Source of the DNA: Oikopleura dioica
Taxonomy: Eukaryota > Animalia > Chordata
Direction: 5' to 3'
Assembly (NCBI GenBank): GCA_907165135.1
Contig: OU015566.1
Location: forward strand, 8,556,001-8,620,000
DNA: 64,000 nucleotides
Under the pieces are notes generated by a model. The model was not told where the DNA came from. It saw nothing but the letters and a program-made list of their open reading frames with translations, and did not search any database. Shown here piece after piece: positions 11,817 to 22,114 of this stretch. The translations under genes and the position numbers were made by a program. Position 1 is the first letter of the stretch. The number at the start of each line of letters is the position of its first letter.

Positions 11817-13610
11817 ATGTCTGGTCTTGAAGTTATCGGTGCGGGCTTTGGAAGAACCGGGACGCTGAGCCTTTACACGGCCTTGAACATGCTCGACGGA
11901 ACTGCGTATTAAAGCTTAAAGCTTAAGGGTAATCCTATACATCGGCGCGGCGCCGCCCGCGCGATCCGCGCTCCGCCAGAACCTATTTTTCACAAGGCCA
12001 TAAAATCCGAACGAAGTAAGACTTTTTCAGAATTCAAAAAGATCCTTAAACTCTCTTCTATTCATCCAGCAAAAATGGAAAATATCGGCAACGAGGAACC
12101 ATTTGAAAACCGCCGGTTTCCTTCAAAAGACATTTCCCGCCACAATTCCTATCCAAATTTCACAAAAATTAGATGGTCTTGTAGAGATTCGTCTGCTCTA
12201 CAATTCCTGTTTCTTAGTTTTATTTAACGCTCTCAATAATTTTACATGGCCATTTGAAAAGAGCGCTATTCTTTCTCGCGCCAAGAGCGGCGTGAGAAAT
12301 AGGAAGCGGAGAGGCGCAGAGCAGAAGAGCGCTCTCTTCAAACTTTCATAGAGAATTATTCAGAACGTAAAAATGAATTCTGAGAAACAGGAATTGTAGA
12401 ACAGACGATTCTCCACAAGACCATCTGATTTTCGTGAAATTTGGATGAGAATTGCGGCGGGAAATGTCCTTTGAAGGAAACTGGTGGTTTTCAGATGCTT
12501 CCTTGAATTCGATTTTCTTCATTTTTGCTGGAGGCATAGAAAAGACTTTAAAGATTCTGAATCTTTTTAAATTTTGAAAAAATCTTACTCCATTCGGATT
12601 TTTCAGCTTCGTGAAAAATAGGTTCTGGCGGTGCGCGGAGCGAGCGAGCGGCGCCGCGCCGATGTATAGGATTACCCTTAAAATAAAATAAAATAAATTA
12701 AATTTCAGTCCATGTTATCACATGCTAGAAAATTTCAAATACCACCACAAGAGTTTTTGGTACCGAGCAAATGAGGCAACAACGATGGAAGAGCGCGAGC
12801 GTGCTCTCAAGGAAGTTCTTACTGATAAGGGCTACAAGGCGATCGTGGATTTTCCTGGCTGCGTCTTCTTCGAAGATTTTATGCGAATGAGCCCCGACGC
12901 AAAAGTTATTCTTTCAGGGCTAGGTTCAAATTTTCAGTAAAGCCTAATAAACGCTTATTTGAAAAAGGCGAAAAATTGAACTCAGAAAAGTACGAGATAC
13001 TCCAGCTGCCTGGTTCAAATCCGTCGACCAGACCATTTTTGCGGAGTGCACTGGCGGTCGAAAGACGATTCTTCAAATGCTTTTTCCTTTTGGTCTTCAT
13101 CGACATGTGATAAAGCCAATTTTTTGGCTTCCTTTTGCCGTGAGTATTCGATTTGCTTACTGAGCCGTATCAACCGTATCAATTGAAGGACTTCGACCGA
13201 ATGCAAAACACGATCGAGCGAATGTTCAGAGGCGCTCCAAAAGACTATTCGAAAGCGGGAATGGAAAAATGCTACACTGATTGGGTGGGGCACGTCAAAG
13301 CTACTGTTCCGAAAGAAAAGCTTCTCGTTCATAATGCTAAGCAGGGATGGAAACCTATTTGCGACTTTCTGGGCAAGCCGGTGCCCGACTGTCCCTATCC
13401 AAGAGTCAACGATTCAGCAGGTAAGAATCAACCGTACCGTTAAAAATATTGAGCATCTTAGATTTTCAGCGAAAAATAATGATGGCTGATGCGATTTCTC
13501 TTGTCTCGATTGCAATCTTTTACGGTGGACTCTTCTATGCTACCAAATATGCAAACGGTGCTGGATACTTCGACTTTTTGAAGAAAGTCGTTGTTGATTT
13601 CCTGCAATGA
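11817..13610 (+). CDS. P-loop sulfotransferase-like protein (Sulfotransfer_4 type) with C-terminal hydrophobic anchor
   Basis: MSGLEVIGAGFGRTGTLSLYTALNML spliced to PCYHM. It also has VPKEKLLVHNAKQGWKPICDFLGKPVPDCPYPRVND, the family's characteristic C-terminal motif. Stop at 13608-13610. Confidence 0.85.
11927..12677. mobile_element. Kolobok-like non-autonomous element (751 bp) in sulfotransferase intron 1
   Basis: TTAA on both sides (11923-11926, 12678-12681). TIR GGGTAATCCTATACATCGGCGCGGCGCCG and its exact complement; arms stay imperfectly inverted for about 350 bp. TTAA TSD with RR..YY termini fits Kolobok rather than piggyBac (CCC termini). Confidence 0.8.
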
Positions 13611-13712
13611 GAATGTGATACTGATAGAATATCAGATATTTTACTCAAATAAATAGGTCATTTTAGTTCGTACAAAATATGAATTTATTATCGAATACAA
13701 AACACAAAGAAA

Positions 13713-15624
13713 TTACAAGAGGGCATCAAAATCAAGGAAAGAACCGACGTTATTATCAATATCAGATGCTGTCGAAATAACCAGAGTCGCTTCGTCACCT
13801 TCTGTATTTCTTGCTAAAATTGTTAGAGGAAATTCACCGCTCAAAAAACCCCCGTCGAAGTAAAAGTTGTCTCCAACACCGTTTGAAAGAGATAACTCTC
13901 GACCGTTGATAGACATGAAATTGACTCCGAATCGTGTGTTGGTTGGTTGGAATGCGTTCCACCACTGGCTTGATCCTTCTTTGATGTATAGTTGTGAAAC
14001 GGGCGAGGAAAGGAATTCTGATGGACATTCGACGAATTCCCACGAGCCATCGTAAAGGCTAAATATTTAAAGGTAAAATTGCTTTAAATATTCCATTGAC
14101 TAACCTTGGGCTTTCATCTCCGGTGACTTCATTCCAAGTCGATGGAGACAAGTCTAAATGATTTTGCTTGCATGTCGCATCTGGGCAGGTGTCAACAACC
14201 ATCGCAATAACCTCGCTTCCAGCTGAACAGGCTCCAGTGAAAACACTCTGAGTGCATTCGCATTTCAGCTTCACACATCGTCCACAGTTCGCACTTGCGC
14301 TGTAGTCGGTATCGTAGTCAAGGGCGACGAAATGTGTAGCAGCTTTTATACTGCCACTGTTGTGAAGGCCGCAGGCACCGTTTGTGTAATCGGAGAGAGA
14401 GTCGTAATGTGTAAACTCGCCGACTCTATTGAATGAAGAGCATGTACCTCCCGCTGTTGTGGTCGTTGCAGGAGTCGTCGTTGATGTTGTGGTTGTTGTG
14501 GTTGTGGTCGTTGTGGTTGTAGATGTAGTTAATGTTGTTGAGCCTGTGGAGGAAGACGAAGTTGTAGTGGTTGTTGAAGCCGCTGAAGTTGTCGATGTTG
14601 TCGATGTACTAACTCCTGTTGTGCTCGTAGTTGTAGAAGAGGTTGTGGAAACTGACGAACCGTAGTCCGTGTTGGTGCAGGGGCACGACTTGATAGCTCG
14701 GAGAACCCAGTTCGCATTGACATTAACAGCATCGTCGAAGGTTTTCAAGTTTGCATCAAACATCATTCCACTTACAAAGTTGGCGTTTTCTTTGAAGGTG
14801 ACTTTCCATCGGACGCCATCATCTAAGCTCTCTACGTTTTCGACCGGATGTCCCCAGCTGAGCCATGAGACGCGAACATCGAATTCGAAGTAAAGGAAGT
14901 CTCTATCACTCCAATCAAGACCATCGAGGCTATATGAAGCACGGATTCGGAAGCAGTTTCTGCACGTCCACGAGTTCTGGAAGGAGATGTTTCCAGTTGT
15001 GAGGTCGGTGCATTCAGGAGCTTTTTCGGCTGGACATCCCGTGGTGTCTGTATCGGTGCCTGGATTAGGTGTAGTCGTCGGTGGGATAGAACACGAATAA
15101 GAGCTCAAATCCGCTGCTTTCTTCGACCCATCTTCTCTCCACTCGCATCCTTTCTTCTTGTGGCAGTTGCAAACAAGATCGACATTATTTGTCGCTGTGG
15201 TTGGAAAGAGGTCGCCTCCGTTGGAGCATGTCATCGCACATCGTCGGTCATCAGTGGGGTCATCGACCGAGCAGAGGAATCCCAAGTTATTGTCGGCGAC
15301 GGCTGGTTCAGCATCGACACTGCCTTCGCAAGTTATGCAGTTAGGGAATGTCTTCTCCCAAGCACCGTCCACGCACTTGTTTCGTGCTCGACCATCTGGA
15401 ATTGAGCCTGGCTTACACATCAGTGTGCATCGTTTGCTGTTACAGTAGTATCTGTCGACATTTCCCGATACTTCTGGAATCGTGCATGTGAGACCTCGAG
15501 GATGACTACCAGATGATCGATTTGACTCGACATTGCTGTTTCTGACAGTTGCTCTCAGGTCTTTGTATTTCCCTGGCTCTTGAGAAGTCGCGGCGGCAAT
15601 CAAAAAAGAGCTTGCTAATTTCAT
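13713..15624 (-). CDS. Secreted modular protein (621 aa): signal peptide, 2 sushi-like modules, Trp-rich putative CBM, Thr/Ser linker, full expansin-like (EXLX) D1+D2
   Basis: Exons 15624-14105 and 14058-13713 with a 46-nt GT-AG intron; 1866 nt in frame. D1 motifs GEFTHY, GACG, VAL, CGRC, VVDTCP, HLDLS. D2 begins WEFVECP...YIKEGSSQWW. AATAAA lies downstream at 13689-13684. Confidence 0.88.
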
Positions 15625-15683: not shown

Positions 15684-15725
15684 TTTATAAACGCGGAACG
15701 AAATAGGAAACGCGCGGTGGCGCTG
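15684..15725 (-). promoter_or_regulatory. TATA-like box plus CAGCGCCACC element upstream of the expansin-fusion gene
   Basis: TTTATAAA about 60 nt and CAGCGCCACC about 95 nt upstream of the ATG. The same two elements are conserved in order upstream of the paralog (20988-21027). Confidence 0.5.
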
Positions 15726-19548: not shown

Positions 19549-21082
19549 TCGACAATAATAATACAGAACATTGAAAGTTTATTCGAGGTATTATTTATGA
19601 TGCAAAAGCCCACGTAGCTACAACAAAAACAGCAAATATACTGATAAAGCCACCAACTATCCACCAACCAAGACTGCAAAGAGGTAAATTCTCCGTAGAC
19701 TTCTTTCTTTTTTCTCTTGGTCGACCCCTTTCAAAGTCCACATCAGCCGGGGCAGATGGTTTTTCTCGTTTGTAATCTTGATTAGATTCAATTCTATCGC
19801 CCCAGTCATCATTTTTCCGCGAGTCCCACGATCGATCGTTCTTAAATCAATGATTTCAAATCATATTTCAAGGTCTTTCTCTGGATACACGTAGTAGATG
19901 TTTTTACAATTATGAATCAAATTTAGTCTCTATTTGAAAAGATACCTTGGAGCTCCTCCAACCAGTATTTCTATTTGTCCCGCTCGAATTCCAGCCAGAT
20001 CCTCCTGCAAGTGGAGCGTCTCTATCATCTTCTTCGTCAGTATCAGTCCACTTTGTCATTTTAGTCTTCTTTGGCCTTGTCCACTTTTTCTCTTTTTCAT
20101 TTTTCTTCAATTTTATTGAAACCAAGCCAGGCGCTAAATTTTTCGCAATCGTGCGAAAAATCAACTTTATAACTTGCACAGGATGCGCAATCAGAAGCAA
20201 GTAAAAATCATAAAGTTCAAACAATTTCGCTTTTGAAAATAAACGGTTTCTCGCTAGACTCCGTCCAACGGAGGAAGTTTTGAACTCTTGTTGAAGGGGT
20301 TCATCTGAAACCTATCAAATACTTCCAGTGTTCAATCTACGAAAGGCGGAAGGGATTAAAAAGTAAAAGCCTTGTTTGGGATGTTTTTGCTTCCCGATAC
20401 ACGTGCAAATTTAGTCTTATCTCGAGGGGACTTACCAGCAACGTGCTAACGGTACGATAAATGGTCTGATATCTGCCTAAATACGAAAGATAACAGCTCA
20501 ATTAAGTAAAAACGGTGCATGGAAAAATGTAGATAAGACAAAATTAAGCAGCTGAATTAAGTGAACTTTGCGGATTGGAAAGTAAATACAGTATTTATTT
20601 AAAAATTAACTTATACACAATTTGAATAATTAGTGTTTATTTCCGTTTTGGCTTAGCGTTTTCGGCCTTTTAGCGTTCTAACGTTTTTTTATAATCATAA
20701 CATTAAATATCGTAAATATATTTCTTTCTCTCATGACGAATACTTGGCTAAGACATTTATCTTTAATTGTAATCTTCAAAAGAAATAATCAAGTTTTTCG
20801 CTTAATGAAATTTTAAATATTCTAAACAGGCTTAATTACGCATGGTTCCATCCCATGTCATGATTCAAAAGGCCGTCAAATCTCTCACGGAAATCTTTTT
20901 TAGAATGGGATTTTTTATCCCTCACTCTAATCATATATCGTATTAACTAGTACTTCTTATCTTTCAACCCCGCGCGACGCTCATTCGCAGCGCCACCTCG
21001 CGTGTCCGGCTTACGCTCTGTTTATAAGCGCTGGAATGGTGCGAAATCATCACCTTTTTCAGCCGCAAAAAGTAAAAAAAAA

Positions 21083-22045
21083 ATGAAACTTACCAGTGCA
21101 CTTTTTCTTGCTTCCGCTACTGCTCAAGAACCAGGAAAGTACAAAGACTTGAGACAAACAGTCAGAAACAGCGTCAGCGAATCAAACCGAGTCGCTGGGT
21201 CCAGCGATGATTCCCGTGCTGCTCTCGAATGCACGATCCCGGAAGTCAGTGGCAACGTTGATGGCTACTACTGCAATAGCAAGCGATGTACTTTGATGTG
21301 CAAACCAGGATCGATTCCTGACGGACGAGCGCGAAACAGATGCATCAATGGCGAGTGGGAGGATGCATTCCCCAACTGCATAACTTGCGAAGGCAGTGTC
21401 GATGCTGAGCCAGCCGTCGCCGACAACAACTTGGGATTCGTCTGCTCCGTCGATGACCCCACTGATGACCGAAGATGCGCTATGACATGCTCAAACGGAG
21501 GCGACATCTTCCCAGCTACAGCGACTAATAATATCGACCTTGTCTGCAACTGCCACAAGAGAAAAGGCTGCGAGTGGAGAGAAGATGGATCAAAGAAGGC
21601 AGCCGACCTCAGCTCTTACTCCTGCTCTACTCCAACAGTAACTATTCCAGAAGGATGTCCTGCAGACAAAGCCCCCGAATGCACTCAACTCACAAGAAAC
21701 AAAATCTCTTTCCAAAATTCCTGGACATGCCGAAACTGCTTCCGAATCCGCGCGTCCTACAGCCTCTCCGACCTCGACTGGAGCGACCTCGATTTCCTCG
21801 TGATTCGATTCGACGTTCGCGTTTCTTGGCTCAGCTGGGGACACCCCGTCGACGATGCTATCAGCTTGGACAACGATGATGGCTTCTTATGGAAGGTCAC
21901 CTTCAAAAAGAACGCGAACTTCCAAAGTGGAATGATGTTTGATGCCAACTTGAGAACTTTCAACAACGCTGTCAATGTCAACGCAAACTGGGTTATTGAA
22001 GATATTCAATCCTGCCCTTGCTCAAACACGGACTACGGTAACTAA
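21083..22045 (+). CDS. Secreted paralog of the 13713-15624 protein lacking the linker and expansin module (320 aa, intronless)
   Basis: MKLTSALFLASATAQEPGKYKDL... is collinear and highly similar to the N-terminal about 320 aa of the expansin fusion. It ends at SCPCSNTDYGN*, with AATAAA about 60 nt downstream. Confidence 0.88.
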   Translation: MKLTSALFLASATAQEPGKYKDLRQTVRNSVSESNRVAGSSDDSRAALECTIPEVSGNVDGYYCNSKRCTLMCKPGSIPDGRARNRCINGEWEDAFPNCITCEGSVDAEPAVADNNLGFVCSVDDPTDDRRCAMTCSNGGDIFPATATNNIDLVCNCHKRKGCEWREDGSKKAADLSSYSCSTPTVTIPEGCPADKAPECTQLTRNKISFQNSWTCRNCFRIRASYSLSDLDWSDLDFLVIRFDVRVSWLSWGHPVDDAISLDNDDGFLWKVTFKKNANFQSGMMFDANLRTFNNAVNVNANWVIEDIQSCPCSNTDYGN

Positions 22046-22114
22046 GTCTGTTTCTGTCATAATATTTTCTACGTTTTGTACTTCTTCTCCTTCATTCTTA
22101 TAAATCAATAAACT

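What the first reader, a model, noticed from the sequence alone, without database searches (positions are those of the whole stretch)
13713..14450. Complete microbial-type expansin (D1 DPBB + D2 CBM63) in an animal gene, a candidate cellulose-house loosening protein
Seen in sequence: after splicing the 46-nt intron, the C-terminal about 230 aa read GEFTHY..GACG..VAL..CGRC..VVDTCP..HLDLSPSTW..WEFVECP..YIKEGSSQWWNAFQPTNTRFGV. Established: this is the two-domain EXLX architecture. Bacillus EXLX1 has VTD (Asp82, needed for wall loosening), LDLS and IKEGSSRWW, whose WW pair stacks on cellulose. Expansins loosen cellulose networks non-hydrolytically and are typical of plants and microbes, with few animal cases such as plant-parasitic nematodes. 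The spliceosomal intron, signal peptide, TATA box, AATAAA and animal neighbours argue against contamination. Inference: larvaceans secrete a cellulose-based house that must be inflated, so an HGT-derived expansin could be the agent that lets the compact rudiment expand. The third aromatic of the EXLX1 triad (Y157) is not clearly conserved.
Basis: partly seen in the sequence, partly recalled or inferred. Interest (0 to 1): 0.95.

Follow-up and report, generated by a model that had tools for sequence, protein, structure and literature searches.

The report
Expansin gene in a larvacean genome
A real, intron-bearing gene of the house-building tunicate Oikopleura dioica encodes a secreted protein that joins animal Sushi modules to a complete microbial-type expansin, a cellulose-loosening protein. 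This fits an animal that builds with cellulose, but expansin genes in this species had already been noted in databases and two preprints.

Summary
The minus strand at 15624..13713 carries a two-exon gene with a 46-nt GT-AG intron at 14104..14059, and it encodes 621 aa. Its last ~220 aa are a two-domain expansin. D1 passes Pfam's EXPB1_D1 cut-off. The AlphaFold model of the Bergen-strain ortholog's expansin module (72% identical, pLDDT 88.5) matches only two-domain expansins at the top of the PDB (TM 0.7-0.84).

It is not contamination. The gene sits on a 14.5-Mb chromosome. A diverged strain has the ortholog in conserved microsynteny, with an intron at the identical codon and phase. RNA reads from that lineage cross that exact junction. 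Synonymous sites are saturated (pS 0.72) while pN is 0.20, and base composition is host-like.

The carrier is Sushi-like modules, an unidentified ~125-aa Cys-framed domain and a mucin-like linker. At least two other expansin-module genes exist in the species: a paralog and a GH9-expansin fusion.

The nearest named relatives outside this clade are oomycete proteins; the donor is unresolved.

A role in loosening house cellulose remains an inference, because I found no expression or biochemical data for this gene.

Novelty is limited. UniProt already labels the Bergen proteins. A 2019 preprint noted an annotated O. dioica expansin. A 2026 preprint places gh9-expansin in posterior Fol cells and proposes that it relaxes cellulose fibres. 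This scan's own notes record other expansin copies elsewhere in this genome.

The parts
15684..15689 (-). TATAAA, a candidate TATA box 65 nt upstream of the ATG
   Evidence: Read directly from the sequence. Its function was not tested.
14105..15624 (-). Exon 1 (aa 1-506 plus 2 nt of a split Ser codon)
   Evidence: Open reading frame from the ATG at 15624. It is identical to the annotated protein P0002 wherever that model has sequence.
15577..15624 (-). Probable signal peptide (MKLASSFLIAAATSQ...)
   Evidence: Hydrophobic N-terminus, mean Kyte-Doolittle 1.8 over aa 3-13. No dedicated predictor was run, so this is an inference.
15085..15507 (-). Two Sushi/CCP-like Cys-rich modules (aa ~40-180)
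   Evidence: Atlas feature search: top score 0.94, and 72 of 100 hits are Sushi clusters. Pfam Sushi was not reached at E<=1.
14659..15039 (-). Unidentified ~125-aa Cys-framed domain (NSWTCRNCFRIRA ... KSCPC)
   Evidence: Conserved in the paralogs and in a marine homolog gene. No Pfam or PDB sequence hit. hhalign against CBM2 repeats was negative, probability 0.3%. The Atlas gave only a weak CBM2-like hint.
14428..14658 (-). Ser/Thr-rich mucin-like linker (77 aa, 81% S+T)
   Evidence: The frame stays open in another lineage with in-frame indels (P0001). Bergen has a (TEPP)n linker here instead. The annotated models splice it out, which is unresolved.
14107..14427 (-). Expansin domain 1 (double-psi beta-barrel), with T405, D478 (VVD) and D491 (HLDLS)
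   Evidence: Pfam EXPB1_D1 at 35.1 bits, alignment A1, fold match.
14059..14104 (-). 46-nt GT-AG intron, phase 2, at the D1/D2 boundary
   Evidence: The annotated model uses it. Bergen has a 42-nt intron at the identical codon and phase. Bergen-type RNA reads cross the homologous junction.
13713..14058 (-). Exon 2: expansin domain 2 (CBM63-type beta-sandwich; IKEGSSQWW, DNFYF) plus the stop codon
   Evidence: Weak direct hits to D2 of YoaJ and other EXLX proteins. The family profile covers both domains of solved expansins. Fold match.
13684..13689 (-). AATAAA polyadenylation signal 23 nt after the stop
   Evidence: Read directly from the sequence.
21089..22048 (+). Inverted tandem paralog with the signal peptide, Sushi-like region and unidentified domain only. 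It stops where the linker would begin and has no expansin module.
   Evidence: tblastn gives 77% identity over aa 3-325. ORF. The Bergen locus has one copy only.

Best explanation
This is a genuine Oikopleura dioica gene. It encodes a secreted, probably O-glycosylated modular protein: signal peptide, two Sushi-like modules, an unidentified Cys-framed domain, a mucin-like linker, and a complete EXLX-type expansin (D1 double-psi beta-barrel plus D2 CBM63-type sandwich). An ancestor of the lineage acquired the expansin module from a non-animal source, and it was then fused to animal extracellular-matrix modules. It has since been duplicated and shuffled, giving a paralog and a GH9 fusion.

The most likely mechanism runs as follows. 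D2 docks on cellulose microfibrils through its aromatic face (WW plus the F-Y-F strand). The D1 groove, with the conserved Thr and two Asp residues, disrupts non-covalent contacts between glucan chains without hydrolysis. This would loosen or remodel the animal's own cellulose, most plausibly the house or pre-house meshwork.

Shown here: gene structure, fold, family membership, conservation and vertical inheritance. Inferred: secretion, cellulose as the substrate, loosening activity, and the house as the site of action.
For: Gene and splice. Identical intron site in the Bergen genome. Bergen-type RNA reads (16 reads in run X6) continue from exon 2 straight into exon-1 sequence across the homologous junction.

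Fold: the model has pLDDT 88.5. The top 12 PDB matches are all two-domain expansins, E 4e-14 to 1e-7, TMq 0.69-0.76. Swiss-Prot AFDB matches are Dictyostelium expansin-like proteins, YoaJ and plant EXPA/EXPB.

Sequence: Pfam EXPB1_D1 is above its cut-off. The family profile hits 7wvr at E 4e-36 across both domains. The functional Thr, both Asp residues and the WW pair are conserved.

Host gene: it lies on a 14.5-Mb contig. Microsynteny with Bergen includes the Sulfotransfer_4 neighbour. pN is 0.20 against pS 0.72. GC and GC3 are host-like.

Family: paralog P0192 and GH9-DPBB fusions. A related marine protein carries CBM2 cellulose-binding repeats.

Context: gh9-expansin is reported as enriched in posterior Fol cells of the house-secreting epithelium.
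Against: There are no expression data for this particular gene in this lineage; the RNA runs laid were from another lineage. It is not found in the held supplementary files of the 2012 house-proteome paper. The residue aligned with the third cellulose-stacking aromatic (Y157) is Asn. The Bergen ortholog has YW instead of WW. The structure was modelled on the 72%-identical Bergen ortholog, not on the window protein itself. Bacterial expansins have only weak loosening activity in vitro (established knowledge), so binding or scaffolding could be the real role.
Confidence: 0.6

Rival explanations
1. It is a structural or organising house protein rather than a loosening agent. The expansin module would serve only as a cellulose anchor via D2. 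It would tether a Sushi- and mucin-bearing glycoprotein to microfibrils and help pattern the meshwork, as oikosins are thought to do.
For: CCP/Sushi modules and heavy glycosylation are typical of oikosins. The long O-glycosylation-prone linker is kept in both lineages although its sequence differs completely. The aromatic triad is imperfect. A tandem copy lacking the expansin module exists, so the carrier may have a role of its own.
Against: The D1 residues needed for loosening in bacterial expansins are conserved: the Thr, the Asp of VVD and the Asp of LDLS. D1 evolves under constraint similar to D2, pN 0.19 against 0.21. The protein was not found in the held supplementary files of the 2012 house proteome.
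Confidence: 0.2
2. It is a digestive accessory factor. It would be secreted into the gut to help open the cellulose walls of ingested microalgae, alongside the expanded GH9 cellulases. This is the role proposed for bivalve expansin-like genes and for microbial expansins.
For: The GH9 family is expanded in O. dioica and one member is fused to the same module. Animal expansin-like genes elsewhere are linked to plant or algal diets or to parasitism.
Against: The only expansin-module gene with published expression (gh9-expansin) is in oikoplastic epithelium, not gut. Sushi plus mucin-linker architecture resembles matrix proteins more than digestive enzymes.
Confidence: 0.12
3. It acts on other cellulose structures of the animal rather than the house, for example the larval tail fin or cuticle made by CesA1, during tail elongation or tail shift.
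For: Larvaceans have two CesA genes, and larval cellulose fibrils lie on the tail ectoderm. RNA support came from only one of three bulk runs (X6), which hints at stage-specific expression.
Against: There are no stage data. The metadata of the bulk runs are coded, so their stages are unknown.
Confidence: 0.06
4. It is an assembly contaminant or chimera from an ingested or associated microbe.
For: Chase et al. raised this as an open possibility for metazoan expansin annotations.
Against: The module lies in one ORF with Sushi-like animal modules. Its intron is conserved at the same codon in two diverged strains. Microsynteny is conserved. Spliced RNA exists. Composition is host-like. No close bacterial or viral relative was found by pattern scans.
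Confidence: 0.01

Closest known systems
Microbial EXLX expansins (Bacillus subtilis EXLX1/YoaJ, PDB 2bh0/3d30; Clavibacter CmEXLX, 4jcw; Talaromyces EXLX1, 7wvr)
   Same: Same two-domain architecture and fold, TM 0.7-0.84 over the whole module. The Thr, the two Asp residues of D1 and the KEGSS-WW motif of D2 are conserved.
   Different: Only 17-21% identity. D1 here carries extra cysteines (CECTQS..C, CPDATC). The column aligned with Y157 holds Asn. The module is the C-terminal part of a 621-aa animal protein with Sushi-like modules and a mucin linker, and an intron splits it at the domain boundary.
Oomycete expansin-like 'carbohydrate-binding proteins' (Phytophthora, Pythium, Lagenidium, Albugo, Globisporangium)
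   Same: These are the nearest named relatives outside this clade, at 30-38% identity over both domains, E 1e-17 to 1e-30. They share the CGRC and CPEC cysteine patterns.
   Different: They form a separate clade in the tree. The larvacean and marine sequences group together (SH-aLRT 93) and do not nest inside the oomycetes. The carriers differ too: oomycete proteins have the module at the N-terminus.
O. dioica gh9-expansin (GSOIDG00010457001; preprint 10.64898/2026.03.31.715263)
   Same: Same species and the same kind of expansin module. GH9-DPBB fusions P0006/P0197 are 46-48% identical in D1. In a related contig the intron lies within one codon of the same D1/D2 boundary. The proposed role is on house cellulose.
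   Different: That gene carries a GH9 hydrolase, and this one has no catalytic domain. It is a different locus. Expression is published only for gh9-expansin.
Plant alpha/beta-expansins (maize EXPB1 2hcz, Phl p 1 1n10)
   Same: Same fold (TMq 0.69-0.76) and the same Pfam D1 family, EXPB1_D1.
   Different: 12-18% identity. This protein does not reach Pfam Expansin_C for D2. It is clearly closer to the microbial EXLX group.
Oikosins (house glycoproteins of O. dioica; Hosp et al. 2012, PMC3390340)
   Same: A secreted, glycosylation-prone modular protein with CCP/Sushi modules, as in several oikosins.
   Different: It was not found by peptide or accession in the paper's held supplementary files. 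No oikosin is described there with an expansin domain.

Membership tests
Expansin superfamily, microbial EXLX type | N-terminal domain D1 with a double-psi beta-barrel (GH45-like) fold | tested here: met
   Pfam EXPB1_D1 scores 35.1 bits against a cut-off of 27 on the window protein. The Foldseek matches cover D1 in all the top expansin hits. The model is of the 72%-identical ortholog.
Expansin superfamily, microbial EXLX type | C-terminal domain D2 with a CBM63-type beta-sandwich, packed against D1 in one ~200-225 aa unit | tested here: met
   Whole-module alignment to 7wvr, 4jcw, 2bh0 and 9ms5, with 230-239 aligned columns and TM by target 0.77-0.84. The family profile covers residues 3-192 of solved expansins. 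The window's exon 2 alone gives only weak hits, E about 0.1.
Expansin superfamily, microbial EXLX type | D1 polar surface residues needed for loosening in BsEXLX1 (T12, D71, D82) | tested here: met
   FTHY (Thr), VVD and HLDLS align with the family columns. The D82 position was fixed by 2bh0 numbering and by the 4js7 D78N mutant. Y73 is replaced by Cys of CPxxC, as in most eukaryotic members.
Expansin superfamily, microbial EXLX type | Linear aromatic triad on D2 (W125, W126, Y157 in BsEXLX1) | tested here: inconclusive
   WW is present (SSQWW) and aligns with W125/W126. The Y157 column holds Asn, followed by F-Y-F. Side-chain geometry could not be inspected, and the Bergen ortholog has YW.
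Expansin superfamily, microbial EXLX type | Lack of the GH45 catalytic base and of hydrolytic activity; wall creep or cellulose-weakening activity | not testable with these tools
   This needs recombinant protein assays.
Oikosins (house structural proteins) | Detected in the house proteome and expressed in oikoplastic epithelium | tested here: inconclusive
   No peptide or accession match in the 11 held supplementary files of PMC3390340. No expression data for this gene. The files held may be incomplete.
CBM2 cellulose-binding module (for the middle domain, aa 196-322) | Sequence or profile similarity to CBM_2 | tested here: not met
   No Pfam hit at E<=1. hhalign against genuine CBM2 repeats of P0163 gave probability 0.3%. 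The Atlas gave only a sub-threshold hint, score 0.74 and TM 0.53-0.57 on a low-confidence model.
Sushi/CCP modules (aa ~40-180) | Four-Cys ~60-aa module with a conserved Trp, recognised by Pfam PF00084 | tested here: inconclusive
   Pfam was not reached. Atlas features score 0.94, with 72 of 100 neighbours being Sushi clusters. The Cys/Trp/Pro pattern is visible in the sequence.

The most novel reading that the evidence does not exclude
The Sushi-mucin-expansin protein, together with its paralog and the GH9 fusion, is the non-hydrolytic agent that lets the compact, pre-patterned cellulose rudiment of the larvacean house slip and expand during inflation. A horizontally acquired wall-loosening protein would then have been co-opted into an animal extracellular matrix. 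Its shuffling onto different carriers (Sushi, GH9, and possibly CBM2 or Sod_Cu in related marine sequences) would be part of how the house evolved.
Probability: 0.25. Interest if true: 0.8.

Novelty: new member of a known kind. Interest (0 to 1): 0.5.

Why it matters
Tunicates are the only animals that build with cellulose, and they owe the synthase to horizontal transfer. Larvaceans would then also hold a small, selected family of expansin-module genes. That would make a second plant/microbe-type wall tool recruited into an animal matrix. It would also give concrete candidates for a long-standing question: how a folded house rudiment expands many-fold within minutes. This work removes the contamination doubt raised in the expansin literature for this species. 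It also defines a non-catalytic Sushi-expansin architecture distinct from the published gh9-expansin. The functional claim is still untested, and the general idea is already in print.

Tried and rejected
1. Folding the ortholog module as a single sequence gave a useless model, pLDDT 37. It was replaced by the model built on an alignment.

2. Read laying on four runs labelled with the species: all reads were 90-95% identical and only partly laid, so they come from another O. dioica lineage. They could not test the 46-nt intron, the linker or the 36-nt candidate intron in this genome. They did confirm the homologous junction in the Bergen-type gene. Depth over 14472-14552 is cross-mapping of Thr-codon repeats.

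3. CBM2 identity of the middle domain was rejected at the sequence-profile level.

4. Bacterial and viral donor scans used exact peptide patterns. They gave one marginal alphaproteobacterial MAG fragment (38% over 40 aa) and nothing viral. These scans are insensitive, so the blanks mean little.

5. Identifying the organisms behind the unnamed marine relatives failed. Cluster look-ups returned no names. One cluster member (P0156) proved to be an unrelated ORF from a gut bacterium.

6. Matching to the preprint's GH9-expansin sequence failed because the supplement text is truncated.

7. PMC6878697 mentions both search terms but is irrelevant.

Full report
**Observation.** The minus strand between 15624 and 13713 holds a 521-codon ORF that runs into a stop at 14059. 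Removing 14104..14059 (46 nt, GTTAGT...ATTTAG) joins it in frame to a second exon. The result is a 1866-nt CDS of 621 aa. The intron splits a Ser codon (AG|C, phase 2) within 'GDESPSLYDGSWEF', at the D1/D2 boundary. So are a TATAAA 65 nt upstream of the ATG and an AATAAA 23 nt after the stop.

**Source of the window.** The window is chromosome 1 of the O. dioica OKI2018_I69 assembly. The annotated protein chr1.g2287 (P0002, on a 14.5-Mb contig) is identical wherever it has sequence and uses the same 46-nt intron. That model additionally splices out the 77-aa Ser/Thr linker and 12 aa inside D2.

**Is it an expansin?**
- D1 of the window protein passes Pfam's curated threshold for EXPB1_D1: 35.1 bits against 27, E 2e-8.
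- Exon 2 alone gives only weak hits, but all of them are to D2 of solved bacterial expansins, around IKEGSSQWW.
- The intact module of the Bergen-strain ortholog (P0003:283-505, 72% identical to the window's) finds 281 proteins at E<=1e-3 and 111 at E<=1e-10. Most alignments span both domains.
- A profile of 40 such sequences, including the window's two pieces, hits the solved expansins across both domains. Scores are E 4e-36 for 7wvr, 3e-33 for 9ms5, 2e-27 for 4jcw, 3e-25 for 2bh0 and 1e-13 for plant beta-expansins.
- An AlphaFold2 model built on that alignment has mean pLDDT 88.5 and pTM 0.87.
- Its 12 best PDB matches are all two-domain expansins, with TM by query 0.69-0.76 and by target 0.68-0.84. 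Single-domain DPBB proteins (kiwellin, loosenin, GH45) follow far behind.
- Swiss-Prot AFDB gives Dictyostelium expansin-like proteins, YoaJ and plant EXPA/EXPB.

**Key residues.** By 2bh0 chain numbering, D71 is the Asp of VTD and D82 the Asp of LDLS. W125/W126 are the WW of KEGSSRWW, and Y157 is the Tyr of MDYNHF. The Clavibacter D78N mutant reads LNLS in place of LDLS. The window protein keeps the Thr (FTHY), both Asp residues (VVD, HLDLS) and WW. Its caution about the third aromatic is justified.

**Host gene or contaminant?**
- The module is in one ORF with animal-type modules.
- The Bergen genome (FN653028.1, locus L012) has the ortholog as a continuous ORF. It has a 42-nt GT-AG intron at exactly the same codon and phase.
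- Neighbours are colinear: a Sulfotransfer_4 gene lies convergent at the 3' end, with further genes on both sides.
- The RNA runs available under the species label come from a Bergen-like lineage, since reads are only 90-95% identical and only partly laid. In run X6, 16 reads lying on 14011-14054 continue with a sequence that is the exact Bergen exon-1 end joined to exon 2. So the D1-D2 junction is spliced in mRNA of the ortholog.
- Between the two lineages, synonymous sites of the module are saturated (pS 0.72) while pN is 0.20. That gives dN/dS of roughly 0.1 or less, and the carrier domains behave similarly.
- GC and GC3 of the module match the rest of the gene and its neighbours.
- Contamination or chimerism is effectively excluded. 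This answers the doubt expressed for metazoan expansin annotations by Chase et al. (10.1101/637728).

**Architecture.**
- aa 1-16 is a hydrophobic leader (inference).
- aa ~40-180 has two Cys-rich modules that the Atlas places among Sushi/CCP clusters, score 0.94 with 72 of 100 neighbours. Pfam does not reach them.
- aa 196-322 is a conserved Cys-framed domain (NSWTCRNCFRIRA...KSCPC) with no Pfam or PDB sequence match. An Atlas hint to CBM2 is not borne out by hhalign against genuine CBM2 repeats. Its nature is open.
- aa 323-399 is 81% Ser/Thr. In Bergen this is replaced by about 27 TEPP repeats, in frame. In a third lineage (P0001) it differs by in-frame indels. This argues that it is coding even though both public gene models skip it.

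**Family.**
- O. dioica Bergen has a second full-length paralog (P0192/CBY11346, 53% identical in the module).
- GH9-DPBB fusions (P0006, P0007, P0197) are 46-48% identical in D1.
- On a genomic contig the GH9 fusion has an intron one codon away from the window's, also phase 2, plus a further intron in D2.
- Tara and other marine assemblies hold more relatives. P0016's gene has two copies of the same unidentified carrier domain, tiny introns and no D1/D2 intron. P0163 carries CBM2 repeats. P0015 carries a Sod_Cu fragment.
- In a 114-sequence tree these form one clade with the O. dioica proteins (SH-aLRT 93). That clade is separate from a large clade containing all the named oomycete proteins, and the backbone is unresolved.
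- The named relatives nearest to this clade are oomycete 'carbohydrate-binding' or expansin-like proteins.
- The organisms behind the unnamed marine sequences could not be established. So 'larvacean clade' is an inference for all but P0016-like genes. The donor remains unknown.
- This scan's own notes list a further expansin gene 5.26 Mb away on this chromosome and a cellulase-expansin fusion on another piece. That agrees with the paralog and the GH9 fusion found here; I did not examine that DNA.

**Function.** Nothing here measures function.
- For a role on the animal's own cellulose: the species builds its house from cellulose; the architecture is matrix-like; the loosening residues are conserved under purifying selection; and a 2026 preprint reports gh9-expansin enriched in posterior Fol cells and suggests that it relaxes cellulose fibres.
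- Against over-reading: that is another gene. This protein was not found in the held supplementary files of the 2012 house proteome. The aromatic triad is imperfect.
- I put about 95% on 'genuine host gene with a true expansin module'. I put about 40% on house cellulose loosening or remodelling as its main job. Cellulose-anchored scaffold, digestive aid and larval cellulose remodelling are the alternatives.

**Novelty.**
- UniProt already names the Bergen proteins 'Expansin-like EG45 domain-containing protein'.
- Chase et al. noted 'an annotated expansin gene' in O. dioica in 2019, misspelt there, which is why a first literature search missed it.
- The gh9-expansin and the cellulose-relaxing idea were published in 2026.
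- New here: the checks showing that this is a host gene, the non-catalytic Sushi-X-mucin-expansin architecture, the evidence for a small shuffled gene family, and the corrections to the public gene models.
- That makes it a new member of a known kind, of moderate interest.

Noticed in passing
window 21002-22045 (+): An inverted tandem duplicate of the gene's 5' two-thirds: signal peptide, Sushi-like modules and the unidentified domain, 77% identical. It ends in a stop exactly where the linker would start, and no expansin remnant follows at E<1e-3. The Bergen locus has a single copy, so this is a lineage-specific duplication or loss.
   Followed up: partly
window 14428-14658 and about 13824-13859 (-): The public model chr1.g2287 (P0002) removes the 231-nt Ser/Thr linker and a 36-nt GT...TTTTAG stretch inside D2 as introns. 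Both are in frame. The 36 nt encode 'GFLSGEFPLTIL', which is conserved in other lineages and lies in a predicted core strand. They are probably annotation artefacts but could be exitrons. No RNA from this lineage was available.
   Followed up: partly
L012 10960-11240 (Bergen) compared with window 14428-14658: The inter-domain linker has been completely replaced between lineages: about 27 TEPP repeats in Bergen against an S/T-rich run in Okinawa. Frame and approximate length are kept.
   Followed up: partly
L002 3760-4000 (Logan contig, GH9-expansin): The GH9-expansin gene has its D1/D2 intron one codon downstream of the window gene's, in the same phase, and a second intron inside D2. The marine homolog in L003 has no intron there. 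This points to intron sliding or turnover at a domain boundary.
   Followed up: partly
P0163 (L010), P0015, P0025: Unnamed marine eukaryotic proteins in the same clade fuse the expansin module to three CBM2 repeats, to a Cu/Zn-SOD-like fragment, or to a CBM4/9-like region. A Sod_Cu domain is also listed among oikosin domains in Hosp et al. 2012.
   Followed up: partly
window 12690-13610 (+): The convergent 3' neighbour is a Sulfotransfer_4-family gene with short introns. Its stop lies about 100 nt from the expansin gene's stop, and it is syntenic with Bergen.
   Followed up: partly
window 12060-12600: A long imperfect inverted repeat (arms at about 12075-12230 and 12346-12540, with mirror-image ORFs) that looks like a foldback or MITE-like element upstream of the sulfotransferase gene.
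   Followed up: no
Atlas neighbours of the module: One of the closest feature-space clusters is made up entirely of Nucleocytoviricota (giant-virus) proteins. This is a possible vector for eukaryote-to-eukaryote transfer of expansins. A pattern scan of IMG/VR found nothing close.
   Followed up: partly
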